Of a stretch of 64,000 nucleotides of DNA, positions 859 to 28,686 are shown piece after piece (the first letter of the stretch is position 1; each line of letters begins with the position of its first letter). The stretch covers positions 1 to 64,000 of IMG/VR virus record IMGVR_UViG_3300033143_001962; one strand, given 5' to 3'. Position numbers and translations under genes: made by a program. The notes below the pieces were generated by a model, which was not told the origin of the DNA, did not search any database, and was given only the letters and a program-made list of their open reading frames with translations.

Positions 859-897
859 AAAAAACCCCTTATACTGTAATTATCAATATAAGAGGTT
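859..897 (-). terminator. intrinsic terminator hairpin after 922..1515
   Basis: Minus strand AACCTCTTATATTG-loop-CAGTATAAGGGGTT followed by a U run. Confidence 0.65.
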
Positions 898-2577: not shown

Positions 2578-2924
2578 CGCACGTTCGGCTGTGGGTGTGG
2601 TAGACGTTCCGGTTGTGCTATCGTGTTGTATATAATTGTTAACCAGTGCTTATCTGAATTCTCAATAACATTACCAGTTTCGTCTAAGTAACCGGGTTGT
2701 ACTTCTTCGGTCATTTTATTAATAACGTCACATGGTACTGCCAGTGTGTCATTACCACTGTTGTAATAATTTATCATTTCCATCACGGTATCGTGATCGT
2801 ACTTGCCTGCGGCTTCTGTTCTAAAACAGTATCCAGCATTTTTTGGATTCCATAATGTAATATACGGGTCTTCTTCTTTAGTGTGCTTTACGCTTACTAT
2901 GTAGTACTTACTTATGTTTTTCAT
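2574..2924 (-). CDS. hypothetical phage protein
   Basis: YYIVSVKHT..DPYITLW.P.NAGY motif; overlaps its neighbours in the operon. Confidence 0.6.
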   Translation of the reverse strand: MKNISKYYIVSVKHTKEEDPYITLWNPKNAGYCFRTEAAGKYDHDTVMEMINYYNSGNDTLAVPCDVINKMTEEVQPGYLDETGNVIENSDKHWLTIIYNTIAQPERLPHPQPNVR

Positions 2925-3156
2925 TTGCTAGGCCTTTTAGTTGTTCAATCAACTCTTTATCAAGTTCTTCTCGGATTCCAATGGCTAATTCTCTTGCCAT
3001 GAAGTCTTGGAATGTTTCTGTTGGCGCTCCATGTTGTAATCTGTGCCATACCTTTTCTTCTTCGGTCATGCCCGCTTCGTCATCAGAAGGCATTATGTCT
3101 GTACCTCTGATATCCCAATTAGCCATTAGTGGGTTAGCTGGTTTTTTATTAGTCAC
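2908..3156 (-). CDS. WxRL-tagged mini-protein with major-capsid backbone-helix fragment
   Basis: EEEKVWHRLQ tag. FMARELAIGIREELDKELIEQLKGLA resembles MCP EIMAALAQEITAEIDQEILLSLRSLA. Confidence 0.65.
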   Translation of the reverse strand: MTNKKPANPLMANWDIRGTDIMPSDDEAGMTEEEKVWHRLQHGAPTETFQDFMARELAIGIREELDKELIEQLKGLANEKHK

Positions 3157-3454
3157 TCATCTTTCCTCTTAATTCGCTTCTGCGTCCTGATATTATAATT
3201 AAATTATTACTTTTTGCAAAGTCCATTAAATGTTTGTACATTCCAGGCGCTTCTTCTTCGAGTCTATCGTCGATACATAATCCTGATGCACTGTGCTCGT
3301 CTACGAAACACGGGTGTACGTACTTGTGATATTGCATACGTTTATTAGCTCCGAATGATGCGGCGGTTCCTGCTAATCGTTTACACCAATCGCTTGGTCT
3401 GAACTTTTTACCTTCTGTAGTTATTCCTACTATTAATTTTGTCGGGTCTGGCAT
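3149..3454 (-). CDS. DUF3579-like protein
   Basis: GITTEGKKFRPSDWCKRL...DDRLEE..P.MY..LMDFAKSNNL matches the proteobacterial DUF3579 pattern as recalled. Confidence 0.7.
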   Translation of the reverse strand: MPDPTKLIVGITTEGKKFRPSDWCKRLAGTAASFGANKRMQYHKYVHPCFVDEHSASGLCIDDRLEEEAPGMYKHLMDFAKSNNLIIISGRRSELRGKMSD

Positions 3455-3474
3455 TTTAATCCTAAATGTTTCTG

Positions 3475-3666
3475 CTATTTAGCCCCGGATAATAACTTCC
3501 AATCTTTTCCATCATACGTCCACATGTCATCCGAACTGTGATCGAAGTAGATGCTGCCGGCTATAGGTTTAGCAAGCGGGTCACTAGTGAATTTTGGACC
3601 AGTGTATTTTAATCTATCCCAGACTTCTTGCTGCTCTTTAGTTAATTGTGGTGTACGTACTGACAT
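3475..3666 (-). CDS. WxRL-tagged mini-protein with tail-fibre repeat unit
   Basis: Likely start MSVRTPQ. Tag EQQEVWDRLK followed by GSIYFDHSSDDMWTYDGKDW. Confidence 0.65.
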   Translation of the reverse strand: MSVRTPQLTKEQQEVWDRLKYTGPKFTSDPLAKPIAGSIYFDHSSDDMWTYDGKDWKLLSGAK

Positions 3667-3946
3667 GCAAGTCTGCTCCGTCAGGTGGAGTTGATTTGAA
3701 CTGTATGGTAGTTGTTGCATTACTTTCAATACTGTAATCAAGTTTATGGCGTAGTTTGCAGCCGTCTTTAAAGACTTCGAATCGCACCTTCTCCAATGTA
3801 AGTGATGGTAATGCAAATACATCGCCCCAACCGTTACCTGTGAAGTGGTTTACACTTATTAGCCGGTCGCTAGCCTGCCTTAGTATATTCCACATTTCCT
3901 TTTTAGACTTAAATGCTTTTGTTATTGTTTTCTTAGGAAGTTTCAT
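3638..3946 (-). CDS. WxxL-tagged mini-protein with virion beta-repeat domain
   Basis: Likely start MKLPKK. Tag KKEMWNILR followed by FTGNG..F...V..DG...DYSI...F..PPDGA. Confidence 0.65.
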   Translation of the reverse strand: MKLPKKTITKAFKSKKEMWNILRQASDRLISVNHFTGNGWGDVFALPSLTLEKVRFEVFKDGCKLRHKLDYSIESNATTTIQFKSTPPDGADLHVSTYTTIN

Positions 3947-4218
3947 TTTAGTCTGCGCCACATTTCCCTTTTGTGATTCTCTTTACGCTCAGCTTTATTT
4001 CTTACATGCACAAAACGTTTATGCTCTACTATCTCATCTAAGTACGGGCAGTTAAACGCAATTTTATCTATGTCATAACTTTGCCCTACTGCTTGACAGG
4101 AGGTAGCAATGTACACACCATCTTGTGATCCGTCAGGCGAGCAGGCATCAATCTCCCACTCAATGTACTCCTGGCATTGTTTATTCCAGCAAAATTCGTT
4201 AAAGACTATGTCAGACAT
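3943..4218 (-). CDS. 4-Cys mini-protein with C-terminal WxRL tag
   Basis: Likely start MSDIV. FNEFCWNKQC...SC...NCPY; ends KREMWRRLK. Confidence 0.65.
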   Translation of the reverse strand: MSDIVFNEFCWNKQCQEYIEWEIDACSPDGSQDGVYIATSCQAVGQSYDIDKIAFNCPYLDEIVEHKRFVHVRNKAERKENHKREMWRRLK

Positions 4219-4522
4219 ATTGTAGTATCCTCCAAATCTTTTCCTTTTTCTTTTGCTTCTGCTCTTCTGCCCATTCCTTTTCAAACAGAAATTTTGCGCG
4301 GGCGTTAGTAACATGCCAATCAACCATACCTTGCAAATGCACACAATTATGCGGGTACGTAGGAATGTTTTCGTCGTTGTCTAAGATCTTAGAGCATGAT
4401 GCATATTCAACAGTGGACACATGAGTTATAAAACCATCTTCCATAATTAATTCTTCGCCGTACTCACTATAGCACTCGCACTCAAAATGATCTCTGCAAA
4501 GTTCGTACCAATTATAACTCAT
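4211..4522 (-). CDS. 4-Cys mini-protein with C-terminal WxxL tag
   Basis: YELCRDHFEC...SC...NCVH; ends KEKIWRILQYV. Confidence 0.65.
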   Translation of the reverse strand: MSYNWYELCRDHFECECYSEYGEELIMEDGFITHVSTVEYASCSKILDNDENIPTYPHNCVHLQGMVDWHVTNARAKFLFEKEWAEEQKQKKKEKIWRILQYV

Positions 4523-4731
4523 TTTAATTTATCCTCAGGGATGGACATTGCATCGTGTATCCTCTGCATGTACTGTTCTCTGAATTTATGCATCGTTGGC
4601 TGCACTGCTGTTTTAATAACATCTATATCTATATCTGCCCATCTATGCCAGCCAGTCTTAGGCTTGTTATCACCTTTAAGCTTATCCCACATTATCCACT
4701 TAGCTGTCTTTGTTTTCTTCGTCTTTTTCAT
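4519..4731 (-). CDS. WxKL-tagged mini-protein
   Basis: Likely start MKKTKK. Contains IMWDKLKGDNKPKTGW, shared with 6000..6311. Confidence 0.6.
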   Translation of the reverse strand: MKKTKKTKTAKWIMWDKLKGDNKPKTGWHRWADIDIDVIKTAVQPTMHKFREQYMQRIHDAMSIPEDKLK

Positions 4732-4969
4732 ATTCTGCTCTGGCTTGTGCAAACTGTTTGTTAGTAATCGGGAGGCCGTGTATCGTCCCGTAAATATCAT
4801 CGTCAGACATTGGCTGTATGCCTACTATATCATTTGCTAATAGTGTTGGCATTACCTTTCTAATCATTGGTATCACTATACTATCAAACCCGGGCTTGTG
4901 TACTTTCTTCAAAGCCCTGAATGTTTTTTGTGCGTCACTTATTGTCTTTTTAGTTAGTTTAAAAGACAT
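4700..4969 (-). CDS. mini-protein carrying the major-capsid Gol-region fragment
   Basis: IVIPMIRKVMPTLLANDIVGIQPMS is 15/25 identical to MCP residues 60-84 in this window. Confidence 0.75.
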   Translation of the reverse strand: MSFKLTKKTISDAQKTFRALKKVHKPGFDSIVIPMIRKVMPTLLANDIVGIQPMSDDDIYGTIHGLPITNKQFAQARAEYEKDEENKDS

Positions 4970-5234
4970 CTATGTACACCGGCATGTTGTTGATCCTTTT
5001 TAAGCTCTTTTCGGGCTCTAATAATTTCTTCCACATCATATCTTTTTTCTTTGCTTCATGCTTTGCTTTCTTAATATCTTCCATGTGTGGGCAATTTTCC
5101 GCTATCTTTAAAATATTAAATGTAATCTTGCTGGTGCCGATGCTGCATGTTATACACCTACCTACTTGCATTTTAATATCAGCGAAGTGCTTACACTCCT
5201 TTGCTCTGCAAAATTCGTTAAAGTTATACGCCAT
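4959..5234 (-). CDS. 4-Cys mini-protein with WxKL tag
   Basis: Likely start MAYNF. FNEFCRAKEC...TC...NCPH, tag KDMMWKKLL, tail INNMPVYIDVF. Confidence 0.65.
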   Translation of the reverse strand: MAYNFNEFCRAKECKHFADIKMQVGRCITCSIGTSKITFNILKIAENCPHMEDIKKAKHEAKKKDMMWKKLLEPEKSLKRINNMPVYIDVF

Positions 5235-5457
5235 TCCTATCATTATACACTTGATTGAGCAATGGTTCTACACCTTTGGATACATCGCGTATAACGCCAG
5301 GGTAGAATGAACTAATATCGTAATCGACTATATGCACACCTGGTTTCATTACGTGTCCTGTCTGTGACAGACGTTTCCACATTGCATCTTGCTCGCGTTT
5401 TAATTGCTTGCGCAAGCCGTTGCGTATTTTACGTTTAGTAATTTCTATTGCATTCAT
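5224..5457 (-). CDS. WxRL-tagged mini-protein with family B DNA polymerase motif A fragment
   Basis: Tag QDAMWKRLS followed by IVDYDISSFYPGVIR (compare PolB DxxSLYPSII). Confidence 0.65.
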   Translation of the reverse strand: MNAIEITKRKIRNGLRKQLKREQDAMWKRLSQTGHVMKPGVHIVDYDISSFYPGVIRDVSKGVEPLLNQVYNDRNGV

Positions 5458-5585
5458 TTATCATCTGGCTCGTTGAATATTATTTTAGCATTTTGGTAAT
5501 CTACCTGAAGCGGTATATACGGGCAATATATATAACCTGCGTTTACCTCTACTTCCACTGGAACGAATTTTAATTTGTCCCACAT
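5454..5585 (-). CDS. 43-aa WxKL-tagged mini-protein with capsid YCPYIPL fragment (not in ORF track)
   Basis: MWDKLKFVPVEVEVNAGYIYCPYIPLQVDYQNAKIIFNEPDDK; AAGGA RBS; ATGA overlap with the next gene. Confidence 0.7.
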   Translation of the reverse strand: MWDKLKFVPVEVEVNAGYIYCPYIPLQVDYQNAKIIFNEPDDK

Positions 5586-5601
5586 TATTTCCTTATCTGT
5601 T

Positions 5602-6003
5602 TTATTCGTGTTGTCCAAACTCTACTCTCTCGGCCATATTTTTCTTAATTTGATTCTGACGGTTCATATTATGAATTGTTCTAGCAAACGATGAGCGACA
5701 TAATACTGTTAAATACGAATACGCATTGCTACTCTTAGTTTCATCGTATCTGTGATAGTACCGTAACATATTAGTAATTGCGTCTTGTATTAAGTCCTCA
5801 GCGTATGTAAACGATTGAAAATTTTTCCTAGTTAATTCTTTCTCTGCTAAATGTACAAGGTACTTTGCTAAGTTGCCAGTCGTTTGTTTAATCAGTTTCG
5901 AGTGACGTATTGCTTCGCGTAACTCTGCGTTGGTTGTGATCTCAACTTGGTTGTACCATGGTGCTTTTAACTTACGCCAAAATAATTTTTGTTCTTTGTT
6001 CAT
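5602..6003 (-). CDS. compact gp55-like (late sigma) paralogue with N-terminal WxKL tag
   Basis: TTGNLAKYL..L.E...R.N...FTY.ED....A......Y DETKSSNAYSY.T....SF.R aligns with 28673..29653. Confidence 0.75.
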   Translation of the reverse strand: MNKEQKLFWRKLKAPWYNQVEITTNAELREAIRHSKLIKQTTGNLAKYLVHLAEKELTRKNFQSFTYAEDLIQDAITNMLRYYHRYDETKSSNAYSYLTVLCRSSFARTIHNMNRQNQIKKNMAERVEFGQHE

Positions 6004-6311
6004 ACAGAAGACGATTCAAAGTCTATTAGAATGGGGCTGTTTTTAGTACGTACTGCCCGGCCAAGACTCTGGAAAGCGATCATACTTTTCCCTACACCAG
6101 ACTGTGCTGTGAATCCATTTATGAAGCTACGGTTAATACCGTGCATGAAGTTTGATGCTTCTGCAAGATTCCGCCAACCTGTTTTCTTAGGTGTATTATC
6201 GCCACTAAGCTTGTTCCATATTTGCGAGGGTGTGCCGTGTATCTTTTCAAACTGCTTACGTTTGCCGTTTGCTATCTTACGTTTATTAATCTGTACTTTA
6301 CTTTCTTTCAT
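6000..6311 (-). CDS. WxKL-tagged mini-protein with RecA/DnaB-type Walker A fragment
   Basis: SQIWNKLS...TGWRNL...GINRSFINGFTAQSGVGKSMI...ILIDFE, then the protein ends. Confidence 0.65.
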   Translation of the reverse strand: MKESKVQINKRKIANGKRKQFEKIHGTPSQIWNKLSGDNTPKKTGWRNLAEASNFMHGINRSFINGFTAQSGVGKSMIAFQSLGRAVRTKNSPILIDFESSSV

Positions 6312-6463
6312 CGTGGTCCTGTATTCTTTGTTGGCTGTTTCATCGACAAAAATATACTAGATAGTAATTTCCATTCTTTCTGTGCTTCGGTGAGTGGAGG
6401 AGTGCTTAACTTCTTCCACATTTCGTGCTGTTCTCTTTCTTCTTTTGTTTTAAATATTTTCAC
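6308..6463 (-). CDS. WxKL-tagged mini-protein
   Basis: Likely GTG start after an AGGA RBS; EREQHEMWKKLS. Confidence 0.55.
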   Translation of the reverse strand: MKIFKTKEEREQHEMWKKLSTPPLTEAQKEWKLLSSIFLSMKQPTKNTGPR

Positions 6464-6743
6464 GGTGCTTCCTGAGTTTTGCTTTTGCTTGTACCCGTGT
6501 ACTAAAATCCGTAGATTCCACATCACGCATCAAATTTGCCAGTGCATCCCTTTCTTGTGCTAATCGTTTTTCTTCTTCGTAGTCAACATCAGCAGACATC
6601 ATTCGTGCTCTAATTCTGACAGACATATCCTGATCTTTACATAATAAATCCAAGTGCTTGCGGGTATGGATTAGCTCAATCTTTTCTTCTTGCGTCAGTG
6701 CTGAAATACGTAGCACATCAAATAAGTCTGTTTCAGTTGTCAT
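6450..6743 (-). CDS. small helical-repeat-like protein, paralogue of 8065..8268
   Basis: DLF..L...ALTQ.EK...I...KHLD....D.D..VR..AR. Confidence 0.6.
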   Translation of the reverse strand: MTTETDLFDVLRISALTQEEKIELIHTRKHLDLLCKDQDMSVRIRARMMSADVDYEEEKRLAQERDALANLMRDVESTDFSTRVQAKAKLRKHRENI

Positions 6744-6900
6744 ATAACGTTTTCTTCTTGCCCATTGTTGCCATTAAGTACGATCTGACTAGATAATTAT
6801 CTTGTACCGCGAAGTTAGGATCAATCCAATATGACTCAACGGCATGCTGAATGCTTCCGTACTTTAATTTTAAAAATGTTACCACTTGTTCAATTTCCAT
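6733..6900 (-). CDS. FLxLKYGS-family mini-protein, 55 aa (not in ORF track)
   Basis: MEIEQVVTFLKLKYGSIQHAVESYW...; directly downstream of a promoter. Confidence 0.65.
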   Translation of the reverse strand: MEIEQVVTFLKLKYGSIQHAVESYWIDPNFAVQDNYLVRSYLMATMGKKKTLYDN

Positions 6901-6949
6901 TTCTAATCGCCAATAGCCGCTTGTTTATGAGGTTGCGCTTTTAAGCTAC

Positions 6950-6979
6950 ATAATAACATTTTATGTTATAAAAAGTCAA
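6950..6979 (-). promoter_or_regulatory. sigma70-type early promoter
   Basis: TTGACT-18 nt-TATTAT with TGn extension. Confidence 0.6.
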
Positions 6980-6986
6980 GTATTTG

Positions 6987-7328
6987 CTAAACATCATTTG
7001 CCAAAATTGCTGTGGCTGATGGCTTTATGCGTTTACGATCGTTGTCGTACTGAGCTGTAGCAATTTCAATACTGCTTAAATGTTTTAATAATGAGTGGAG
7101 TTTTTTATCTTCGTTGCCTAACTTTGACCACATAATGTCTTTGCTGAACAAGGTGCGAATCGCGTTAACGTTTGTTTCAATTCTTTCTAACCTGCCATTG
7201 AACTCGCCTACGTTTCCATTGTGCTGCCGGACCGTGTGTGCGAGCTTAGTTTTCAACCCCGAAATTTCATCGTCTTTGTCACGGAGTTGTTGTTGCAGGT
7301 CTCTAATTAAATTCTTCTTAGCTGTCAT
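6987..7328 (-). CDS. coiled-coil protein with internal WxKL tag
   Basis: Heptad-rich N-half; KDIMWSKLG. Confidence 0.6.
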   Translation of the reverse strand: MTAKKNLIRDLQQQLRDKDDEISGLKTKLAHTVRQHNGNVGEFNGRLERIETNVNAIRTLFSKDIMWSKLGNEDKKLHSLLKHLSSIEIATAQYDNDRKRIKPSATAILANDV

Positions 7329-7380
7329 AAATCACCTAAATGTTATCAATACTACGCTTTCTTACTACGACTACGAGCTA

Positions 7381-7409
7381 AGTATAACATTTTTTGGTGC
7401 AGAAGTCAA
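7381..7409 (-). promoter_or_regulatory. sigma70-type early promoter
   Basis: TTGACT-17-TATACT with TGn extension. Confidence 0.75.
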
Positions 7410-7582
7410 GCTTTTCGCTTATTTAGGTTAATAAAGTTGTAATTATTGTATTGTTCTTTGGAGTACAGTAGGAGTGCTTTGTGTTCGTCGTTGGATAGAT
7501 TGATATCATTGTTGACCCAAAGGTCGAATGCGTTTGTCATGCTGCCGTACTTGAGAATTAGAAAGGTTTTTGCCTGGTCCAT
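7406..7582 (-). CDS. FLxLKYGS-family mini-protein, 58 aa (not in ORF track)
   Basis: MDQAKTFLILKYGSMTNAFDLW... Confidence 0.65.
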   Translation of the reverse strand: MDQAKTFLILKYGSMTNAFDLWVNNDINLSNDEHKALLLYSKEQYNNYNFINLNKRKA

Positions 7583-7634
7583 AGTAAATATTTACCATAG
7601 TACGGCTTTTTACGTGGGGGCGCTTTTGACCCTA

Positions 7635-7663
7635 AGTATAACGTTTTGTTATTTAAAAGTCAA
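7635..7663 (-). promoter_or_regulatory. sigma70-type early promoter
   Basis: TTGACT-17-TATACT. Confidence 0.75.
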
Positions 7664-7869
7664 GTTTTTATTAGCAGTTTGAAGAACATTGCGTCTTGCT
7701 CTTGCTCAAACCAGAAGACTGGGGCGGTGTACTGATATATAAATTTGCCAGTGGTGTGCTTGCTGCACCATGCGGATAGTTCTAATAGATTATTTTTACT
7801 ATGTGTGAATGATACTTTATACCATGTGTTTCTATCAAAGGCATCGTAACATTCTTGATTCTTTTTCAT
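7660..7869 (-). CDS. small hypothetical phage protein (W-C...FWFEQEQDAMFFKL type)
   Basis: Overlaps the upstream gene (ATGA); motif style common in small phage proteins. Confidence 0.6.
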   Translation of the reverse strand: MKKNQECYDAFDRNTWYKVSFTHSKNNLLELSAWCSKHTTGKFIYQYTAPVFWFEQEQDAMFFKLLIKT

Positions 7870-8072
7870 CGGAAGTTATTTATTTTTTTCAGTATATCAA
7901 GCAACTCCGGAATGTCCGGGTGTAAGTCCGGATCAATGCTATCCAGCCAGTGCTTGAACTCTTGGTCGTATTTTTGTATATTGATTTCTTTAATGAGCTC
8001 TAATTTCTGCTCGGTGGTTAAATACTCTTTGGTTAATCTATGCCACAGTTCTTTCTTTTCTTCTTCACTCAC
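7866..8072 (-). CDS. mini-protein with N-terminal WxRL tag
   Basis: MSEEEKKELWHRLT. Confidence 0.6.
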   Translation of the reverse strand: MSEEEKKELWHRLTKEYLTTEQKLELIKEINIQKYDQEFKHWLDSIDPDLHPDIPELLDILKKINNFR

Positions 8073-8268
8073 TTTGCCATCCTAGCGTTTTAAGTTGTTT
8101 GTTTATTCTAACGTACTCTTGTTTATGCTTTTGCTTTCTTGCGTATCTTCTAACTTCACTATCATCATCGTTTTCAAAATAATCTAAGTGCTTGTTACTA
8201 GCAATGCATAACATCTTTTCGTACTGAGTGAGGGCGTTTAATTTTATAATTGTGAATAAATCTTCCAT
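8065..8268 (-). CDS. paralogue of 6450..6743
   Basis: Likely start MEDLF; ALTQYEK...KHLDYFENDDDSEVRRYAR. Confidence 0.6.
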   Translation of the reverse strand: MEDLFTIIKLNALTQYEKMLCIASNKHLDYFENDDDSEVRRYARKQKHKQEYVRINKQLKTLGWQSE

Positions 8269-8373
8269 AGCTATGTCTGTGTTTTTGCGCTTGGGCAACT
8301 CACTTCGTGCCTTGCGTTCTCTCTGTAAGTTACAGTCGAACCTACTCACCAAGCTCCTTGCTTTCGCAGACTA

Positions 8374-8403
8374 AGCATAACATATTTTAGAGGCAAAAGT
8401 CAA
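8374..8403 (-). promoter_or_regulatory. sigma70-type early promoter
   Basis: TTGACT-18-TATGCT with TGn extension. Confidence 0.6.
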
Positions 8404-8418
8404 CCGAGGTTTGCCAAA

Positions 8419-8859
8419 CTAAACGTTGTCGTTTTCATGTAGGCGTGTGTATAATGATAGTGCTAAATCAAATTGCATAATATGTGACATTATCCAGGGA
8501 CGGATTATCGATACTAAGTAGTATCCCATAACTTTTGGATTATGCGATAACTGTGATGTGTCAGCAACTTGATGACGTATATCATTGTGTGATTCTTTGT
8601 GACAATCGGCTGCTAATTTAGGAAATCCAATTCTATGCATTAGTGCTTCTTCGTGTTCTAAATGTGTGTCAACGTAGTCAACTAGCTCATCGTAGTACTG
8701 CTGAATGTGCTCTATTGTTGGGTCATCGTGTGTAATTTCGTTAATAATATTATTGCATAATTTAAACAGATTTCGGTGTTCGTTATCTATTTGTAAGTCG
8801 CCTGTTTCAAGGTCAGGTTGCCATTCTAACGGCGTTAGATTATCGGATTGTGGGGTCAT
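8419..8859 (-). CDS. bacteriohemerythrin
   Basis: W...LETGDLQIDNEH..LF, HLEHEEALM, HKESH, WIMSHIMQFD: complete hemerythrin di-iron ligand set (H, HxxxE, HxxxH, HxxxxD). Confidence 0.9.
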   Translation of the reverse strand: MTPQSDNLTPLEWQPDLETGDLQIDNEHRNLFKLCNNIINEITHDDPTIEHIQQYYDELVDYVDTHLEHEEALMHRIGFPKLAADCHKESHNDIRHQVADTSQLSHNPKVMGYYLVSIIRPWIMSHIMQFDLALSLYTRLHENDNV

Positions 8860-8891
8860 TGTATAGTCCTATTTTAAGTTAGCTATTAGTA

Positions 8892-8920
8892 ATTGTAGCA
8901 CGGAATCGCACCAAAGTCTA
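8892..8920 (-). promoter_or_regulatory. sigma70-type promoter for hemerythrin
   Basis: TAGACT-17-TACAAT with TGn; a GATAAATA late-type box also lies at 8930..8937. Confidence 0.55.
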
Positions 8921-8942
8921 GTAGTTTTTTATTTATCGTGTT

Positions 8943-9089
8943 TCATTTTAATGCAAAAAATTCGTTAAGCATATTGAATTCTGCTACTGGCATTTTAGCG
9001 ACTGCTGACCAATTCATCATCATATCATATGCTTTTTGTTGTGATCCGTACTTAATAACAATGAATGATTTTATTTCTTCAGTACTCAT
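8943..9089 (-). CDS. FLxLKYGS-family mini-protein
   Basis: Likely start MSTEEIKSFIVIKYGSQQKAYD. Confidence 0.6.
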   Translation of the reverse strand: MSTEEIKSFIVIKYGSQQKAYDMMMNWSAVAKMPVAEFNMLNEFFALK

Positions 9090-9261
9090 AAGTGTACGCT
9101 CCTGTTCGGCGATTATTGTCTTTTGCCCATTGTGCAATCAGATCTGATTCTTCTTGTGTAAATGAGGTATCATCAAATTTATACATCCATTCTTCATAAG
9201 CAAGTATCATACTACCGTACTTTAGTACAAGAATTAGTTCAGTGTCTTTACCCGTTTTCAT
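9079..9261 (-). CDS. FLxLKYGS-family mini-protein
   Basis: ELILVLKYGSMILAYEEW. Confidence 0.65.
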   Translation of the reverse strand: MKTGKDTELILVLKYGSMILAYEEWMYKFDDTSFTQEESDLIAQWAKDNNRRTGAYTYEY

Positions 9262-9403
9262 CTGACCACCATTCCATAAATTCAGTTAGCATTGCGTCGA
9301 GATCTGTACCTAAATCGTCACCTGTAAAATTACAATACACCATTACAATGTCATCATTGGACCCGTAACGTAATCTTAAATATGTTAGTACCGCTGGATT
9401 CAT
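9248..9403 (-). CDS. FLxLKYGS-family mini-protein, 51 aa (not in ORF track)
   Basis: MNPAVLTYLRLRYGSNDDIVMVY...; ATGA overlap with 9400..9618. Confidence 0.6.
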   Translation of the reverse strand: MNPAVLTYLRLRYGSNDDIVMVYCNFTGDDLGTDLDAMLTEFMEWWSDENG

Positions 9404-9618
9404 GCTTTTAACTTTGCCCACATGTACAATCTATTAATTTCTTCGTCAAACTCAGGTGTGCGTATCGTGTACCCTTTGCCGTTAATTCTATACTGGTAAT
9501 TATCAAAATCGTAAGTCTTAGGTGCAGAGACTCTGTAGTGTCTGACCCAGAACAATGTGCCATTTAAGCATTCGTATACTACATCACGTTGGTGCATTAT
9601 AACCGAGACACTATTCAT
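9400..9618 (-). CDS. RINGxxY-family mini-protein with C-terminal WxKL tag
   Basis: YRINGKGY...EFDEEINRLYMWAKLKA. Confidence 0.6.
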   Translation of the reverse strand: MNSVSVIMHQRDVVYECLNGTLFWVRHYRVSAPKTYDFDNYQYRINGKGYTIRTPEFDEEINRLYMWAKLKA

Positions 9619-9940
9619 CTTTCTTCTCCGGGACGTGGTCTACTACTAATCTAAGTTCATGCATTGTTAAACGTGTGTACATACCAGGTGGTAGATTTAT
9701 CCAGTAATGATATGCATTAAACACTGACCCGTACTTCCAAATTAGTACCATCTCGGCGTTATCTTTAGTAACATCCAATGTCTCCAGGCAGCCCTGTTCG
9801 CACCATAAATTTAATAGTGGTGGTACATTTTCAACTGTTCTGACTCCTGGCATGTTAACTGCTACTTCAAACGCTGTGATCACTTCTCCGATTGAAGAGT
9901 ACTTAAGTGACAGGAATACTTGCTGTTCATCTTCAGTCAC
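9611..9940 (-). CDS. tandem two-domain FLxLKYGS-family protein
   Basis: VFLSLKYSS and MVLIWKYGSVFNAY. Confidence 0.65.
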   Translation of the reverse strand: MTEDEQQVFLSLKYSSIGEVITAFEVAVNMPGVRTVENVPPLLNLWCEQGCLETLDVTKDNAEMVLIWKYGSVFNAYHYWINLPPGMYTRLTMHELRLVVDHVPEKKDE

Positions 9941-10124
9941 TTAGCTTCTCCCACACACGTTCTTTCTTACGTTCTTCATAAAATGCTTTTCTGTACTCAA
10001 GTGTATTTTCACTGTACAGTACATCGTTAATACGAAGTGTAACCCAGCTTTGTGAAATTGCACTTTGTCGTAGCGTACTGCATACTTGCGCAAATTTACC
10101 ACTGCTTAATTCAATTTCAATCAC
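9933..10124 (-). CDS. RINGxxY-family mini-protein with C-terminal WxKL tag
   Basis: LRINDVLY...KERVWEKLSD. Confidence 0.6.
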   Translation of the reverse strand: MIEIELSSGKFAQVCSTLRQSAISQSWVTLRINDVLYSENTLEYRKAFYEERKKERVWEKLSD

Positions 10125-10311
10125 TTAGCTTCTGCCATATCTCTGCTTTTTCAATAAATTCTGTTGCTGCTCGTCTAAATGCGTACGAATCTTTTTTGTA
10201 AATAACACCTTTAATTCTGAACGTGTGCCACGCAAAATTAGGATTCTTTAAACGTGGCACATTAGCCTTCACCCAATACCCGCAGTACTTTTCTCTATAA
10301 TGTGCTTTCAT
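10117..10311 (-). CDS. RINGxxY-family mini-protein with C-terminal WxKL tag
   Basis: FRIKGVIY...KAEIWQKLSD. Confidence 0.6.
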   Translation of the reverse strand: MKAHYREKYCGYWVKANVPRLKNPNFAWHTFRIKGVIYKKDSYAFRRAATEFIEKAEIWQKLSD

Positions 10312-10320
10312 ACCCGCCTA

Positions 10321-10497
10321 CTAATAGTTGTGCTCTTGCTGAACAAATCGATAATACCAATCTAACATCTCGTGTCGTTGTACTGTAGTAAACAAATCAT
10401 AATCGCTTCGTAAGTCGCCGTCACGCATTGCGTCGTAAGCGTTAGCCATGCTCCCGTACTTTAATATTAAGAATGTTCTAGTCTTTTCAGGACTCAT
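10321..10497 (-). CDS. FLxLKYGS-family mini-protein, 58 aa (not in ORF track)
   Basis: MSPEKTRTFLILKYGSMANAYDAM... Confidence 0.65.
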   Translation of the reverse strand: MSPEKTRTFLILKYGSMANAYDAMRDGDLRSDYDLFTTVQRHEMLDWYYRFVQQEHNY

Positions 10498-10696
10498 TGT
10501 ACAATTCCTTTATGAAGAAGTCAAGCATCAATTCTTCTTGTTGATTAACATTCATTAAATGGTATGCTATCTGGTCTCCGAATTCAAGCGAGTCATGAAA
10601 CGCATCAGCTAACTGTTCTAAGCCGCCGTGTTTAAGTGCTAAGAATGTGTATTCCTCGGTTGTTATAAAATCATCAAGTTCAACGGTTTCAGTCAT
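10487..10696 (-). CDS. FLxLKYGS-family mini-protein
   Basis: YTFLALKHGGLEQLADAF. Confidence 0.6.
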   Translation of the reverse strand: MTETVELDDFITTEEYTFLALKHGGLEQLADAFHDSLEFGDQIAYHLMNVNQQEELMLDFFIKELYNES

Positions 10697-10697
10697 T

Positions 10698-10886
10698 TTA
10701 ATCCCACATGTACCTGCGTCTGTTCAATTCACTGTCAGTTGCGTAGTAAAAGTAATTGTTCATTATTGTGTAGTCATCCGGCACTTGCTTTCCAACAACG
10801 GTACTAGTATTCATAAAGACTTGATAGGCTTTGTACACCGTACCGTACTTTAAAATTAAATAAGATTTAGTTGCTGCGTAGTTCAT
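10698..10886 (-). CDS. FLxLKYGS-family mini-protein
   Basis: KSYLILKYGTVYKAYQVF. Confidence 0.65.
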   Translation of the reverse strand: MNYAATKSYLILKYGTVYKAYQVFMNTSTVVGKQVPDDYTIMNNYFYYATDSELNRRRYMWD

Positions 10887-11086
10887 AATATGATCTTCTG
10901 TACACGTTCAGGAATTATTAAATCACCTTGTTCCTTTTTAGATTTAATATGCGATTGAATAAAGCTTAGTAATTTGTAGTAGTCTGGATCACTGTCGAGT
11001 CCTAGTGATCGCAATGCACTGTACCTAGAAAAGATATGTGCTACGCTTCCATATTTAAGCATAAGGAATGTGTCTTCAGAATTCAT
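10883..11086 (-). CDS. FLxLKYGS-family mini-protein
   Basis: DTFLMLKYGSVAHIF. Confidence 0.65.
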   Translation of the reverse strand: MNSEDTFLMLKYGSVAHIFSRYSALRSLGLDSDPDYYKLLSFIQSHIKSKKEQGDLIIPERVQKIIL

Positions 11087-11277
11087 TAAATTAAATCCAT
11101 TGCATATTCCATTGCAGATTTAGTTCTTATCGCAAGATGGTGTGCCCAAGCATACCCTACTATCATGCATTGTTCATCTTCTGTAAAATCAGCATCCCAA
11201 TCATCAGATATGTTATAAGCATCAATGGCATTTTCCATGCTACCGTACTTTAATATTAAGAATGTTTTAATTGGCAT
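11086..11277 (-). CDS. FLxLKYGS-family mini-protein
   Basis: KTFLILKYGSMENAIDAY. Confidence 0.65.
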   Translation of the reverse strand: MPIKTFLILKYGSMENAIDAYNISDDWDADFTEDEQCMIVGYAWAHHLAIRTKSAMEYAMDLI

Positions 11278-11516
11278 TATGATTTACCGTACACTGTGGT
11301 AATTGTAGGGGCAAATACCCCATTCAATGCTGCCCAAGCTTCTAATGGTTTTACTACTTCATCGAACTCATCGGATGGTTTTTCATATATAAACCCATTT
11401 ATTTTAAAGTCAAACCTCTTAAAATTGTACTGGCGATCAGCCATTATTGTTGACTCTCTCCATACGCTGTCAAAGATTTCTCTATTTTTTGAGTACAAAA
11501 TGTCCTGATTAGCCAT
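11277..11516 (-). CDS. RINGxxY-family mini-protein
   Basis: Likely start MANQD, downstream of the promoter; FKINGFIY...EFDEVVKPLEAWAALN. Confidence 0.6.
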   Translation of the reverse strand: MANQDILYSKNREIFDSVWRESTIMADRQYNFKRFDFKINGFIYEKPSDEFDEVVKPLEAWAALNGVFAPTITTVYGKS

Positions 11517-11546
11517 GGTTATTACCCTTCTGAACGAATATAATGT

Positions 11547-11575
11547 AGTGTAACAGGTTATTTTGGGAAAGTCAA
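11547..11575 (-). promoter_or_regulatory. sigma70-type early promoter heading the mini-gene array
   Basis: TTGACT-17-TACACT with TGn extension. Confidence 0.7.
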
Positions 11576-11608
11576 GCTTTTGATAGGCACTCATTAATAA
11601 ATATATTA

Positions 11609-12091
11609 GTGAACTACTTAATACTAATTGACGTTTGGGGACGATTGTCAACACCGTTAGAGATCATTTGTAAAACTAATATAGCATTATTAATATCTGA
11701 TGTCTCAGACAATCCAAATTGGAAAATAATATATCAGGATTTTGATCCTGATATCGATCCTAAAATTCAGCACGTTTGCAACAATTCAAATAATGCAATA
11801 CCCGAGCACGATTGGGCTAATTTAAAATTAGATTCAAAAGACATAGTGTACTTTGCTGGGTTTCATGCTAATCACTGTTTGTTTGAGAAACCGTTAGGTA
11901 TTGATAATCTATTAAGTTTGCACCCTGCTCAAGAATTTTTTGTGTTATCCGACCTAACATGTGGGCTGAATCAACACACTCCTGTACCTATCAGTGACTT
12001 ATCTATTATTAATTTCAATAATGATTATAGTGTAAAAATGAACATGCGGCGCGCAATGCTGCTCGATAATTTACTTAGTATACAAATTTAA
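11609..12091 (+). CDS. isochorismatase/cysteine-hydrolase-like protein
   Basis: LILIDVW ... VYFAGFHANHCL ... VLSDLT. Confidence 0.55.
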   Translation: MNYLILIDVWGRLSTPLEIICKTNIALLISDVSDNPNWKIIYQDFDPDIDPKIQHVCNNSNNAIPEHDWANLKLDSKDIVYFAGFHANHCLFEKPLGIDNLLSLHPAQEFFVLSDLTCGLNQHTPVPISDLSIINFNNDYSVKMNMRRAMLLDNLLSIQI

Positions 12092-12094
12092 GTC

Positions 12095-12123
12095 AAAAAA
12101 AAGCACTCCGAAGAGTGCTTTTT
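12095..12123 (-). terminator. intrinsic terminator after major capsid gene (likely bidirectional)
   Basis: Minus strand AAAAAGCACTC-TTCG-GAGTGCTTTTTTTT with a UUCG tetraloop. Confidence 0.9.
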
Positions 12124-12146: not shown

Positions 12147-13337
12147 TTAGCTGAAAGACAAGTTGCTTACGCTGATTTCGCCTAAGTAATCACCAGCATT
12201 ACCAAAAGATGATGCAGTGTTAGTGAGTTCCACGTAACCATAACGTGTCATGAAGCTTACAACTGGTTCGAACGTAGACGGATCTAAAACAACGCCTGAG
12301 CTCATTAAAGGAATGTAAGGGCAGTAGAACGCTGGAGCGTCTGCTTCACTTGAACCTTTATAACCAATAAGTACCGGAGTACTATCAGCAGCATATGAAT
12401 CAACATATACTTTCATAGCACTGTTTAATGTACCAACTAACTTAGTGTTAGTAGGAGCTTCAAAAGTACCTTCAGTTGTACGTGCAAATGCAGATGTAGT
12501 AGCTGATTGTAATACTGTTAATGCAGCTGGACTAACAACGGCATAGTTACCTGCGCCACGACGTGTACGTTGTGCGATAAGGTTAGCAGTACGGTTAACT
12601 AATACAGCAAGTGCCGCATGTTCATCACCTACGAATGTAGCAGTACCAGATACAGCAGCTTGATCGTAGTTGAATTCAGTTGACGCTAAAGAACGTAAAG
12701 ATAATAAAATCTCTTGATCGATTTCAGCGGTAATTTCTTGTGCTAATGCAGCCATGATTTCAGCTTCGACATCAATGCCGTGCATTGATTGTGCATCTTG
12801 AGCAGCTTCAAAAGTCCAACGCGCTTGTAACTTACGTGTCTTCGCTTCAACAGCTTGCTTTAAGATTTGAACGGAAATGTTACGACCGCCTTCACCTTCC
12901 ATTTGCGCTGTAGCAGCACCACGGTAGTCAGTCTGTGTAGCACCAACGCCTGCAGAGTATGCTTGAGCAATTTTGAAAGGACTTAACGCTTCATCACCAG
13001 CTGTAGTTGGTGTACCAGCAGCAGATGTATCGTTCATTGTTGAACCGTAACGTACACGTAAAGTATGGATCTGGCTTACTGGACCAGACATTGGTTGAAC
13101 ACCTACTAATTCGTTTGCAATTACCGTAGGCATTACACGTCGAATTACTGGTAAAATTACACGGTTTAATGTTGCAACGTTACCAGCGGCAGTAGCGCCA
13201 CTTGTAGCAGATTCTGCTAAGTGGTTACGAGTGTTTTCTAGGATTACGCCCATTGTAGAACGTTTAGTACCGTCTAGACCTTCAAGCAATGCTTCTTTAG
13301 TCTCTCCCCAACGGCCTTCTAATAGTGCTTGTGACAT
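12147..13337 (-). CDS. gp23: major capsid protein (T4 gp23-like)
   Basis: RRVMPTVIANELVGVQPMSGP, KTRKLQARWTFEAAQD..HGID.EAE, FYCPYIPL, FMTRYG. Confidence 0.95.
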   Translation of the reverse strand: MSQALLEGRWGETKEALLEGLDGTKRSTMGVILENTRNHLAESATSGATAAGNVATLNRVILPVIRRVMPTVIANELVGVQPMSGPVSQIHTLRVRYGSTMNDTSAAGTPTTAGDEALSPFKIAQAYSAGVGATQTDYRGAATAQMEGEGGRNISVQILKQAVEAKTRKLQARWTFEAAQDAQSMHGIDVEAEIMAALAQEITAEIDQEILLSLRSLASTEFNYDQAAVSGTATFVGDEHAALAVLVNRTANLIAQRTRRGAGNYAVVSPAALTVLQSATTSAFARTTEGTFEAPTNTKLVGTLNSAMKVYVDSYAADSTPVLIGYKGSSEADAPAFYCPYIPLMSSGVVLDPSTFEPVVSFMTRYGYVELTNTASSFGNAGDYLGEISVSNLSFS

Positions 13338-14454: not shown

Positions 14455-14465
14455 ATTTCAGTCTC

Positions 14466-15098: not shown

Positions 15099-15105
15099 CG
15101 TAGTA

Positions 15106-15900: not shown

Positions 15901-16026
15901 TCTTAAATCTCCTAAAAGTATACTTTCTATGACTGTATTTAATAGCTAAAGTCTAAAAGTACGTATTTAATAGGAGAAAAGGTGTGAAAAGGTATATCTT
16001 TTGTGAAATCTACTAGAAATAGTAGA

Positions 16027-16550: not shown

Positions 16551-16558
16551 AATACTAT

Positions 16559-27797: not shown

Positions 27798-28686
27798 GAA
27801 GCTCCTTTGGGTATGTATATGTCCATAATTCTGTTGTTGTTTTGGGAAAGTCGTCACCAATGTCATTACATCTTAATTCGAGATTTAATTCTTCTCTAAG
27901 ATATTTTTGTATGTATGCTTCGTCGTATACGGTACTGTCGTCTGGCATGTTGCAATTAATGTGTTTAGTAAAGTTATCTAAGAACAGTGCTATATCTTTG
28001 TCCTTATTAAGGTGCTTTTGTAAGCTTAACATTTCATTGTGATTTGTCATTATAGTGTCGTAACTTTCGGTTACGTCGAAGTTAAGTTCACGCGCTAACC
28101 GCATTAATGTATTTTTAAAATCAAATAATAAATCTTTGATGTTGATTTCAATACACTTGTCCTTGCTATTATATTCGCCAACTGAATTTACGCCTTTGAT
28201 AAATTCTTTATAACTGTAAAATTCTCGCATGTTTGCAACTTTTGAAAAATCCTCATCATTGATTTCTTTTCTATGCTGGTCTATTAGATATCTGTCATGA
28301 ACTTTATCGTGCTTGTTGTTGCGAATTAATAAATGCATGTCTGCGTCGGATCTAATTAATATACCTTTGACAACTTTTGATAAAATGTAATCAACACTTT
28401 CACCAGCACTCGAATCGGTTAAGTCACGCTCGTCATTAAATACATGATGCATTCGGAAAAACGGAAGTGTGTCTGGCCCGTGTACATGTTGCTCGAACGT
28501 AGGCATGTTAATCCTTGAGTTATATATTGTGAAATTTTTCTGCGTGTGAGAATTGCCATTCTTTCCCCACGGCAATTCCGGACTATCACAAAGCCCAATG
28601 CTGGTAAAATTGTTAAGTACCCAATAAAGATACGACCCGTATGCTCCAGGCTCGTATATTATAGGTATTGTTTTACTTTTTGTCAA
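27790..28686 (-). CDS. hypothetical protein, possible sulfotransferase-like P-loop fold
   Basis: N-terminal IIYEPGAYGSYL loop. Confidence 0.35.
   Translation of the reverse strand: MTKSKTIPIIYEPGAYGSYLYWVLNNFTSIGLCDSPELPWGKNGNSHTQKNFTIYNSRINMPTFEQHVHGPDTLPFFRMHHVFNDERDLTDSSAGESVDYILSKVVKGILIRSDADMHLLIRNNKHDKVHDRYLIDQHRKEINDEDFSKVANMREFYSYKEFIKGVNSVGEYNSKDKCIEINIKDLLFDFKNTLMRLARELNFDVTESYDTIMTNHNEMLSLQKHLNKDKDIALFLDNFTKHINCNMPDDSTVYDEAYIQKYLREELNLELRCNDIGDDFPKTTTELWTYTYPKELHE

What the first reader, a model, noticed from the sequence alone, without database searches (positions are those of the whole stretch)
5602..6003. Second, compact gp55-like late sigma factor expressed from the early array
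NAELREAIRHSK...TTGNLA...R.N...TY...KS.N.Y.Y.T....SF.R aligns along its length with the gp55 at 28673..29653, but lacks that protein's large internal insertion and begins with a WRKL tag. It could be an alternative sigma, a competitor for core RNA polymerase, or a decoy.
Basis: partly seen in the sequence, partly recalled or inferred. Interest (0 to 1): 0.6.

Follow-up and report, generated by a model that had tools for sequence, protein, structure and literature searches.

The report
Tagged, truncated second gp55 sigma-like protein
An uncultured jumbo phage carries, besides its normal late sigma factor, a 133-residue cut-down copy that keeps the part that grips the host RNA polymerase but lacks the tail of a working T4-type late sigma; it carries a short tag shared with neighbouring mini-proteins, so it is more likely a polymerase-occupying modulator than a second full sigma.

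Summary
ORF 5602..6003 (minus strand, 133 aa) is a real gp55-family protein: BLASTP E 3e-12 to the window's long gp55, phrog_234 E 8e-22, and T4 gp55 (7D7C) as top sequence and fold match. It holds helices H1-H4 of the sigma region-2-like domain. It lacks the long form's ~185-aa insertion, helix H5 of the helix-loop-helix motif, and any C-terminal clamp-binding tail. It is not an orphan: about 25 metagenomic cluster representatives of 124-145 aa share its architecture and N-terminal tag (L-x-K-x-Q-x-x-x-W-x-x-L-K-x-P-Y). They form an old lineage separate from the long forms. The RNA-polymerase contact residue (T4 E70 position) is acidic in all members, but the -8/-9 promoter-pocket residues have relaxed. 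The ortholog in the closest complete genome is 36% identical, against 77% for the long gp55, although both genomes share the same promoter motifs. A controlled complex model places helix H3 on the beta-prime clamp helices (0.71 against 0.00). The gene lies in a clade-specific array of small tagged proteins, several of which are fragments of the major capsid protein. Best reading: a polymerase-docking competitor or modulator. A true minimal sigma and a decoy role are not excluded. It is a new variant of a known kind.

The parts
5602..6003 (-). Gene for the short gp55-like protein (133 aa, P0001), stop codon included
5956..6000 (-). N-terminal tag, residues 2-16 (N-K-E-Q-K-L-F-W-R-K-L-K-A-P-W). 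W9 and L12 are at least 90% conserved in the subfamily. Predicted helix 3-13.
5620..5931 (-). Sigma region-2 homology core, residues 25-128 = gp55 helices H1-H4 with a long H4 (94-128). There is no H5, linker or clamp-binding motif after it.
5749..5802 (-). Helix H3 (residues 68-85), the predicted contact with the beta-prime clamp helices. It holds D70 (T4 E70 position, acidic in 100% of the subfamily) and D74.
6950..6979 (-). Nearest upstream sigma70-like promoter match (TTGACT-18-TATTAT with TG), in the 6900-6987 intergenic gap
   Evidence: consensus match only
6000..6311 (-). Upstream, translationally coupled small gene (103 aa) carrying the tag internally (Q-I-W-N-K-L-S-G)
5454..5618 (-). 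Downstream mini-gene, with a likely real start at ATG 5585 after AGGA: tag (M-W-D-K-L-K) followed by the capsid-protein-like strand Y-C-P-Y-I-P-L. The same gene pair follows the short gp55 in distant contigs (L099, L119).
2908..11654 (-). Array of small minus-strand genes with 15 copies of phi-W-x-[KR]-L. It starts after the capsid gene's terminator.
4700..4969 (-). Array gene (89 aa, P0153) that copies the N-arm of the major capsid protein (PF07068 positions 4-61, E 2e-9, above the Pfam cut-off)
12147..13337 (-). True major capsid protein (gp23 type, 396 aa), immediately upstream of the array
12098..12123 (-). Terminator-like hairpin between the capsid gene and the array, followed by a TTGACT promoter match at 12096
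28673..29653 (-). Long gp55 (326 aa, P0002; phrog_12791 E 5e-72), the conserved single-copy late sigma of this jumbo-phage group
29682..29709 (-). Sigma70-type promoter match (TTGACT-16-TATAAT with TG) upstream of the long gp55

Best explanation
The ORF encodes a truncated, tagged paralog of the T4-type late sigma gp55. It consists of the sigma region-2-like four-helix domain only. It is probably made from sigma70-type promoters of the small-gene array. It then docks through helix H3 on the beta-prime clamp helices of the host RNA polymerase core, which is the site used by sigma70 and by the phage's own long gp55. It lacks helix H5 of the helix-loop-helix motif and has no sliding-clamp-binding tail. 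Its lineage has also let the -8/-9 promoter-pocket residues drift. So it most likely acts as a clamp-independent occupant of the sigma site: a competitor or modulator that lowers sigma70-dependent (host and early) transcription or tunes access of the long gp55. It probably does not read a promoter class of its own. The N-terminal tag is a separate short docking motif shared with neighbouring mini-proteins, and its partner is unknown. Shown: homology, fold, truncation, the conservation pattern, the existence of the subfamily, and co-occurrence with the long form in two genomes. Inferred: RNA polymerase binding (model only), timing, and the competitor role.
For: - Family and fold. The AlphaFold model has pLDDT 92 and T4 gp55 7d7c_F as top Foldseek match (probability 1.00, TM 0.63/0.61).
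- Truncation: a median of 25 residues follows the F106 position, against 77 in canonical and 50 in long forms.
- T4 experiments: gp55 without the HLH motif still binds RNAP but is impaired in open-complex formation and transcription, and loss of the clamp-binding motif leaves basal transcription intact (PMC7892883).
- RNAP contact: the E70-equivalent residue is D or E in 100% of 24 short forms, the best-kept position.
- Complex model with E. coli beta-prime 240-330: score 0.71, best control 0.00. That mark was reached by 58 of 80 solved complexes and 2 of 110 mismatched pairs. Runs agree in at least 91% of contacts and partner pLDDT is at least 74. The interface is P0001 69-81 with beta-prime 263-298.
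- Relaxed DNA pockets: the T99 position is T in 25% of short forms, against 92% of canonical and 100% of long forms, and the H95 position is diversified.
- Fast evolution: 36% identity between the G000 and G001 orthologs, against 77% for their long gp55s. Both genomes keep the same motifs: ATAAATA-N5-ATG 22 and 16 times, GGTTGACC..TATAAT 10 and 10 times.
- Accessory status: three relatives at least 99% complete have only the long form, and no deposited phage record shows two gp55-like places.
- Sigma70-like promoters sit in the array's gaps.
Against: - P0001 itself keeps most T4 promoter-pocket residues (N13, R57, F86 as Y, Y97, T99). The subfamily keeps an aromatic at Y97 in 100% and at F86 in 96%, and a basic residue at 114/115. 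That fits continued DNA binding.
- The long H4 is retained. The exact boundaries of the T4 'HLH truncation' are not in the paper's main text, so the analogy is imperfect.
- The complex score may reflect memory of solved sigma-beta-prime complexes, and it used E. coli beta-prime because the host is unknown.
- A pure competitor would also compete with the phage's own long gp55.
- Timing is inferred from consensus matches only.
- The shared tag and the capsid-fragment neighbours hint at a function not centred on transcription.
Confidence: 0.45

Rival explanations
1. It is a genuine minimal sigma factor. It binds core and initiates, without clamp help, at ATAAATA-type promoters or a subset of them (for example before replication starts), or at a lineage-specific variant element, giving the phage a two-step gp55 cascade.
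For: - P0001 keeps N13, R57, Y97 and T99, with Y at the F86 and H95 positions.
- The subfamily keeps aromatics at the stacking positions and a basic residue near R114.
- It is the only gene in G000 and G001 that reaches Pfam's Sigma70_r2 cut-off in the genome search.
- In T4, gp55 without its clamp-binding motif supports normal basal transcription.
- The long H4 is retained.
- No gp33 homolog was detected, so the clamp-coupled T4 scheme may not apply here (though the control was silent).
Against: - H5 of the HLH motif is missing, and truncating that motif impairs open-complex formation in T4.
- The -8/-9 pocket residues are not conserved across the subfamily.
- The orthologs are 36% identical while the promoter repertoire is unchanged.
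- K-mer enrichment found only sigma70-type motifs and ATAAATA, with no third promoter class.
- It is absent from close, complete relatives that use the same long gp55.
Confidence: 0.3
2. It is one member of a clade-specific set of tagged miniatures of late proteins (capsid-protein pieces, a tail-fibre-like piece, the gp55 core). The members act as decoys or dominant-negative fragments against host sensors of late proteins, against co-infecting related phages, or in assembly timing. The tag brings them all to one common partner. Transcription control by this member is secondary.
For: - The tag is enriched 15 against 0.24 in this array, and 14, 12, 9, 6 and 4 against at most 0.24 in five other contigs.
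- Array genes copy capsid-protein segments above the Pfam cut-off.
- Capsid fragments and the short gp55 co-occur: G000 and G001 have both, and G002, G007 and G008 have neither.
- The gene pair 'short gp55 + tagged Y-C-P-Y-I-P-L mini-protein' is conserved in distant contigs.
- Among the top 150 profile hits the tag occurs in 25 of 65 short forms and in 0 of 85 longer gp55s.
- Fast evolution fits a conflict role.
Against: - No partner for the tag is known.
- No defence system that senses gp55 is known to me.
- The best-conserved residue of the subfamily is the RNA polymerase contact, which points to the polymerase as the target.
- A decoy of a trigger would be expected to fire a sensor rather than block it.
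Confidence: 0.17
3. It is a decaying duplicate of gp55 with no function.
For: It is short, lacks C-terminal parts, and is 36% identical between two related genomes.
Against: - The frame is intact in both genomes.
- About 25 cluster representatives below 50% mutual identity keep the same length, the same ends, the tag (W9 and L12 at least 90%) and D70.
- Monophyly is not rejected, and the lineage is separate from the long forms.
- The model is confident (pLDDT 92).
Confidence: 0.03

Closest known systems
Bacteriophage T4 gp55 (late sigma factor; PDB 7D7C/7D7D; phrog_234)
   Same: Same family by sequence profile and fold. It has helices H1-H4 of the sigma region-2 homology domain with an unusually long H4. 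It has an acidic residue at the clamp-helix contact (E70 position). In P0001, most pocket residues for the -10-like element are kept.
   Different: 52 residues shorter: no H5 (so no complete helix-loop-helix motif), no linker and no C-terminal sliding-clamp-binding motif. It has an added conserved N-terminal tag. It is a second copy beside another gp55, it evolves fast, and the pocket residues at the T99 and H95 positions are relaxed across its subfamily.
Long gp55 of gp23-type jumbo phages (phrog_12791; RaK2, PA5oct, Atu_ph07, Phosso group) = window 28673..29653
   Same: Same genome, same family, and a shared core (29% identity over 86 residues). Both have sigma70-type promoter matches upstream.
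   Different: The long form has a ~185-residue insertion between H1 and H2 and about 50 residues after the core. It is single-copy in every relative checked and slow-evolving (77% between G000 and G001), with 100% conserved pocket residues. The short form is a separate old lineage, not a recent copy of it.
Region 2 of cellular sigma70-family factors (Pfam Sigma70_r2)
   Same: It reaches or borders the Pfam cut-off (23.7 and 24.5 bits against 24). Structural matches to region 2 of many sigma factors follow T4 gp55 in the fold search. The predicted docking on the beta-prime clamp helices is the region-2 mode.
   Different: No regions 1.1, 3 or 4, and no -35 recognition. There is no Sigma70_r4 anywhere in G000 or G001.
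Capsid-targeting sequence of T4 internal proteins (a short N-terminal tag shared by several unrelated small proteins). This is a comparison from general knowledge, not tested here.
   Same: The concept only: one short peptide shared by otherwise unrelated small phage proteins, here next to the head-gene operon.
   Different: The sequence is unrelated. The tag here also occurs internally and at extreme C-termini, with no conserved protease site after it. The array has sigma70-like promoters. No virion proteome is available.

Membership tests
T4-type late sigma gp55 (phrog_234) | Significant sequence or profile similarity to gp55 | tested here: met
   phrog_234 E 8e-22 over residues 27-127; T4 gp55 chain 7d7c_F E 1e-6; whole-record search E 7e-23
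T4-type late sigma gp55 (phrog_234) | Sigma region-2-like fold, helices H1-H4 with an extended H4 | tested here: met
   AlphaFold2 pLDDT 92 with helices 25-38, 43-57, 68-85 and 94-128; Foldseek top hit 7d7c_F, probability 1.00, TM 0.63
T4-type late sigma gp55 (phrog_234) | Acidic residues of H3 that bind the beta-prime clamp helices (T4 E70, D74, E77) | tested here: inconclusive
   P0001 has D, D, T. In the subfamily the E70 position is 100% acidic, the D74 position 46% acidic and the E77 position not acidic. The long form has E, Q, L. The complex model puts 69-81 on beta-prime 263-298 at 0.71 against 0.00 for controls. No binding was measured.
T4-type late sigma gp55 (phrog_234) | Pocket residues for the -10-like element (N13, L54, R57, F86, H95, Y97, T99) | tested here: inconclusive
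   P0001 has N, E, R, Y, Y, Y, T: five kept or conservative, two changed. In the subfamily Y97 is aromatic in 100% and F86 in 96%, N13 is kept in 71%, and T99 is T in only 25%.
T4-type late sigma gp55 (phrog_234) | Complete helix-loop-helix motif (long H4 + H5), needed in T4 for normal open-complex formation and transcription | tested here: not met
   The protein ends about 5 residues after H4. The subfamily has a median of 25 residues after the F106 position, against 77 in canonical forms. Requirement from PMC7892883.
T4-type late sigma gp55 (phrog_234) | C-terminal sliding-clamp-binding motif | tested here: not met
   There is no C-terminal tail. The phage's polymerase ends in a T4-like F-G-N-L-F-E-F motif that resembles neither the short protein's ends nor the tag.
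T4-type late sigma gp55 (phrog_234) | Directs RNA polymerase to TATAAATA-type late promoters | not testable with these tools
   ATAAATA is the enriched late-type motif of this genome (35 upstream regions against 5 expected), but which gp55 reads it cannot be computed.
Cellular sigma70 family | Region 2 plus region 4 (-10 and -35 recognition) | tested here: not met
   Sigma70_r2 is borderline (23.7 bits, 24.5 bits, cut-off 24). There is no Sigma70_r4 in G000 or G001, while the control genomes all matched.
Tagged short gp55 subfamily (defined here) | 124-145 aa; N-terminal L-x-K-x-Q-x-x-x-W-x-x-L-K-x-P-Y/W; ends about 25 residues after the core | tested here: met
   25 tagged members among the top 150 profile hits; 0 of 85 longer hits carry the tag; 22 of 24 in one supported set, monophyly not rejected

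The most novel reading that the evidence does not exclude
The phi-W-x-x-L peptide is a docking tag that marks a whole module of miniatures of the phage's own late proteins: the polymerase-gripping core of gp55, the N-arm and two other segments of the major capsid protein, and a tail-fibre-like piece. It delivers them to one common partner, which could be a host immune sensor or protease, a hub protein of the phage, or the prohead for injection into the next cell. The short gp55 would then be the polymerase-directed member of a previously undescribed 'tagged miniature' strategy of jumbo phages.
Probability: 0.17. Interest if true: 0.85.

Novelty: new variant of a known kind. Interest (0 to 1): 0.55.

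Why it matters
In every deposited phage matched here, gp55 occupies a single place in the genome. A second, conserved, truncated copy with its own tag shows that the sigma region-2 module has been reused as a small stand-alone polymerase binder. If it competes for the clamp helices, it would be a phage-encoded 'sigma mimic' way of shutting off sigma70 transcription or timing late transcription. That would differ from AsiA-type anti-sigmas, which bind sigma itself. If it initiates, it would be the smallest known working sigma and would show that H5 and the clamp link are dispensable. The shared tag and the capsid-fragment neighbours make a larger question testable: what early-region arrays of small ORFan genes in jumbo phages are for.

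Tried and rejected
- The exact T4 octamer TATAAATA is not enriched (20 found against ~33 expected). The enriched core is ATAAATA.
- I looked for a third promoter class that a second sigma could read. The other enriched 7-mers showed no coherent motif in context.
- Tag as clamp-binding motif: rejected as unlikely, because the polymerase's C-terminal tail is T4-like and unlike the tag. An exonuclease C-terminal W-K-K-L is only loosely conserved in orthologs.
- Tag derived from the capsid protein's N-terminus: the capsid protein lacks it.
- DNA-level repeat: rejected, because the codons of the tag vary.
- The 1130-aa protein with W-K-K-L at residue 16 looks coincidental.
- The word-index protein search found only the query itself. 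The near-DNA search in phages found nothing.
- The search for related loci with the 26-sequence alignment failed for lack of a conserved stretch.
- Most other members lie on contigs of 1-4 kb, so co-occurrence with a long gp55 could be checked only in G000 and G001. The close fragments L003 and L004 end before the expected position.
- The gp33 (phrog_254) and gp45 C-domain (PF09116) searches found nothing, but their controls were silent, so they are uninformative.
- No sequencing run was listed, so no reads were laid and expression is untested.
- The literature searches found no description of a tagged short gp55 or of leaderless late mRNAs with this motif.
- dN/dS was not computed: at 36-51% identity, synonymous sites are saturated.

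Full report
**What is there.** The window is the first 64 kb of a 249,797-bp IMG/VR virus record, about 72% complete. On the minus strand, 5602..6003 is an intact ORF of 133 codons. Its ATG overlaps the stop of the upstream gene as ATGA. The product (P0001) matches the window's long gp55 (P0002, 28673..29653 minus) with BLASTP E 3e-12. It also matches PHROG 234 'late sigma transcription factor' at E 8e-22, T4 gp55 in PDB 7D7C at E 1e-6, and Pfam Sigma70_r2 at the cut-off (23.7 bits; 24.5 bits). In a family alignment it aligns from its first helix to its end with T4, cyanophage, pelagiphage and long jumbo-phage gp55s. The long forms carry about 185 extra residues between H1 and H2.

**The genome and its sigma complement.** The long gp55 is closest to those of Phosso, RaK2, PA5oct and Atu_ph07 (34-41% identity) and to many uncultured contigs. 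These are the gp23-capsid jumbo phages that lack an RNA polymerase of their own (group 2 of PMC7824862). The record holds exactly two gp55-like genes, no other Sigma70_r2 match and no Sigma70_r4. The closest complete relative is G001 (344,483 bp, terminal repeats, long gp55 77% identical). It has the same two genes in the same arrangement. Three relatives at least 99% complete, with long gp55s about 51-53% identical, have only the long one. In 50,697 deposited phage records, every record that matches any of the three queries has a single matching place (628/628, 423/423, 551/551).

**Anatomy against T4 gp55.** The cryo-EM study of T4 late transcription (PMC7892883) defines the functional parts:
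- E70, D74 and E77 on H3 bind the beta-prime clamp helices.
- N13, L54, R57, F86, H95, Y97 and T99 form pockets for bases -12, -9 and -8 of the -10-like element.
- A clamp-binding motif starts near residue 175.
- Without the HLH motif gp55 still binds RNA polymerase but is impaired in open-complex formation and transcription. Without the clamp-binding motif basal transcription is normal.

P0001 has D, D, T at the three H3 positions and N, E, R, Y, Y, Y, T at the pocket positions. Its AlphaFold2 model (26-sequence alignment, mean pLDDT 92) has a tag helix at 3-13 and then four helices at 25-38, 43-57, 68-85 and 94-128. The best structural match in the PDB is T4 gp55 itself (7d7c_F, probability 1.00, TM 0.63/0.61), followed by region 2 of many sigma factors. 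The protein ends five residues after H4. So H5, the linker and the clamp-binding motif are absent. The main text of the paper does not give the boundaries of the 'HLH truncation', so the experimental analogy is approximate.

**A subfamily, not an orphan.** The word-index search found only the query. The exhaustive profile search found 2478 gp55-like representatives. The best ~25 of these are 124-145 aa and match from the first residues to the last. Their alignment shows a conserved N-terminal tag, L-x-K-x-Q-x-x-x-W-x-x-L-K-x-P-Y/W, with W9 and L12 at least 90% conserved, and a near-invariant D70. Among the top 150 hits the tag is present in 25 of the 65 proteins of 150 aa or less and in none of the 85 longer ones. 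On a core-only tree, 22 of 24 short forms fall in one supported set (SH-aLRT 95). Holding all 24 together gives a better likelihood than the free search (p-AU 0.82). The long forms are a separate branch with support 94. The short form is thus an old lineage, not a recent copy of the resident long gene. The ESM Atlas also holds viral clusters of 128-150-aa region-2-only proteins with tens to hundreds of members.

**What selection keeps and what it lets go.** I compared 24 short, 75 canonical and 63 long forms.

| T4 position | Short forms | Canonical forms | Long forms |
|---|---|---|---|
| E70 (clamp-helix contact) | acidic 100% | acidic 99% | E 100% |
| Y97 (stacks on base -12) | aromatic 100% | aromatic 100% | Y 100% |
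| F86 | aromatic 96% | aromatic 100% | F 100% |
| T99 (base -8) | T 25% | T 92% | T 100% |
| H95 (base -9) | diversified (Y 38%, F 21%) | F 97% | F 100% |
| Residues after F106 (median) | 25 | 77 | 50 |

The G000 and G001 orthologs are 36% identical, with Y97 to F and T99 to V in G001, while their long gp55s are 77% identical. Yet both genomes use the same regulatory motifs. ATAAATA followed by exactly five bases and ATG occurs 22 and 16 times, and other spacings occur 0-4 times. GGTTGACC..TATAAT occurs 10 and 10 times. A factor that reads dozens of fixed promoters should be constrained, as the long form is. The short form is not.

**Binding to RNA polymerase.** A controlled complex prediction of P0001 with E. 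coli beta-prime residues 240-330 gave a score of 0.71 against 0.00 for the best of three controls. That mark was reached by 58 of 80 solved complexes and 2 of 110 mismatched pairs. The three runs agree in at least 91% of contacts, and the partner's pLDDT is at least 74. The interface is P0001 40-50, 69-81, 116 and 120 with beta-prime 263-298, which is the H3-clamp-helix mode of gp55 and region 2. Because such complexes are solved, this shows likeness and not proof. The host is unknown, so E. coli served as a surrogate. The tag helix is not in the interface.

**Expression context.** The array of small minus-strand genes (about 2908..11654) begins after a terminator-like hairpin that follows the major capsid gene (12147..13337). 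Its short intergenic gaps hold recurrent TTGACT-17/18-TAnnnT matches, often with TG. The nearest one upstream of P0001 is at 6979..6950. The long gp55 has TTGACT-16-TATAAT, an AGGAG and then its ATG. Both sigma genes therefore look sigma70-driven. However, the total count of matches is not above shuffles, and the ortholog's array in G001 has no clear consensus sites. Two ATAAATA sites also lie inside the array at 7883 and 8936. No sequencing run was listed. 'Early' is an inference of moderate strength.

**The neighbourhood changes the picture.**
- The tag phi-W-x-[KR]-L occurs 15 times in the array, against 0.24 expected. It occurs 14, 12, 9, 6 and 4 times in five other contigs that carry a short gp55, against at most 0.24 expected. 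The codons vary, so it is a peptide motif. It can sit near the N-terminus, inside a protein, or at the extreme C-terminus.
- Several tagged neighbours are fragments of the major capsid protein. ORF 4700..4969 copies the N-arm (PF07068 positions 4-61, E 2e-9). The gene just downstream of P0001 carries Y-C-P-Y-I-P-L from the capsid protein's C-terminal part. A third fragment lies at 156.8 kb. Other contigs show the same above the Pfam cut-off. Another neighbour type matches DUF7360 or DUF2793 in its C-terminal part.
- G000 and G001 have both the short gp55 and the capsid fragments. G002, G007 and G008 have neither.
- The pair 'short gp55 + tagged Y-C-P-Y-I-P-L mini-protein' recurs in a distant contig.
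- The tag is unlike the polymerase's T4-style clamp-binding tail and is absent from the capsid protein's own N-terminus. Its partner is unknown.

**Interpretation.** It is well supported that this is a conserved, functional, truncated gp55 paralog whose best-kept surface is the polymerase contact. I rank a polymerase-occupying competitor or modulator first (0.45). The reasons are the missing H5, the missing clamp link, the relaxed pockets, fast evolution against a fixed promoter set, and accessory distribution. A true minimal sigma comes second (0.30), because P0001 itself keeps most pocket residues and the long H4. A decoy or hub role within the tagged-miniature module comes third (0.17). Pseudogene decay is very unlikely (0.03). 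None of these can be settled without binding and transcription assays.

**Novelty and score.** gp55 and its long jumbo-phage form are known. Neither the review read here nor the two full-text searches turned up a tagged, H5-less second gp55, and the 50,697 deposited phage records showed no second gp55-like place. It is a new variant of a known kind. Interest is 0.55: moderate for the sigma itself, raised by the shared tag and the capsid-fragment array.

Noticed in passing
window 2908-11654 (minus strand); also L094, L100, L102, L103, L104: A short peptide motif, phi-W-x-[KR]-L (fuller N-terminal form M-x-K-L-[ST]-K-E-Q-x-E-V-W-D-[KR]-L-K-x-G), is shared by most small proteins of the array: 15 copies against 0.24 expected here, and 4-14 copies against at most 0.24 in five other contigs. 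The codons vary and the position in the protein varies. The partner is unknown.
   Followed up: partly
window 4700-4969, 5454-5618; G000 156733-156831; L088, L100, L102-L104, L119: Small array genes encode fragments of the phage's own major capsid protein (the N-arm, an H-G-I-D-V-E helix segment, a Y-C-P-Y-I-P-L strand), several above Pfam's Gp23 cut-off and usually fused to the tag. They occur only in the genomes that also have the short gp55 (G000 and G001, not G002, G007 or G008).
   Followed up: partly
whole record G000 (e.g. window 16562, 11597; G000 128032, 131260, 137092, 139953, 146578, 155699, 169236, 226597, 227301): The late-type motif ATAAATA lies exactly 5 bases before an ATG 22 times (other spacings 0-4 times), and 16 times in 240 kb of G001. 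With T4 late-promoter geometry the transcript would start on the A of the ATG, so many late mRNAs would be leaderless. The full-text search found no paper holding these terms together.
   Followed up: partly
G000 83419-183100, minus strand (outside the window): About 17 copies of a near-perfect extended sigma70 promoter with a conserved upstream part (A-A-A-A-G-G-T-T-G-A-C-C-T-T-T, spacer, T-G-n-T-A-T-A-A-T). The core GGTTGACC..TATAAT is equally frequent in G001 (10 and 10). It is a promoter class distinct from the TTGACT type of the array.
   Followed up: partly
window 863-897 (minus) and L094 6632-6664: A conserved terminator-like hairpin (A-A-C-C-T-C-T-T ... A-A-G-R-G-G-T-T followed by a T run) closes the small-gene array in both G000 and G001.
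   Followed up: no
G000 185381-186451 (minus): The RNase H/FEN-type exonuclease (phrog_107) ends in F-Q-T-W-K-K-L-E-R-K-Q, which resembles the tag. The G001 and G002 orthologs end in W-K-T-Y-[RK]-[RK]-L, and G008 lacks it. The DNA polymerase (214604-217375) ends in a T4-like clamp-binding F-G-N-L-F-E-F.
   Followed up: partly
L119 1684-5389: A distant contig carrying a short gp55 holds about a dozen tandem paralogs of another small protein family that begins M-I-K-I-D-W-K-Q-F ... W-F-G-W.
   Followed up: no
window 13360-18259 (minus): Upstream of the capsid gene lies a run of minus-strand genes of 566, 75, 264, 210 and 364 aa, with ATAAATA sites at 18287 and 16562. By size and order it looks like a T4-style head-morphogenesis operon (portal, protease, scaffold), but the genes were not identified here.
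   Followed up: no
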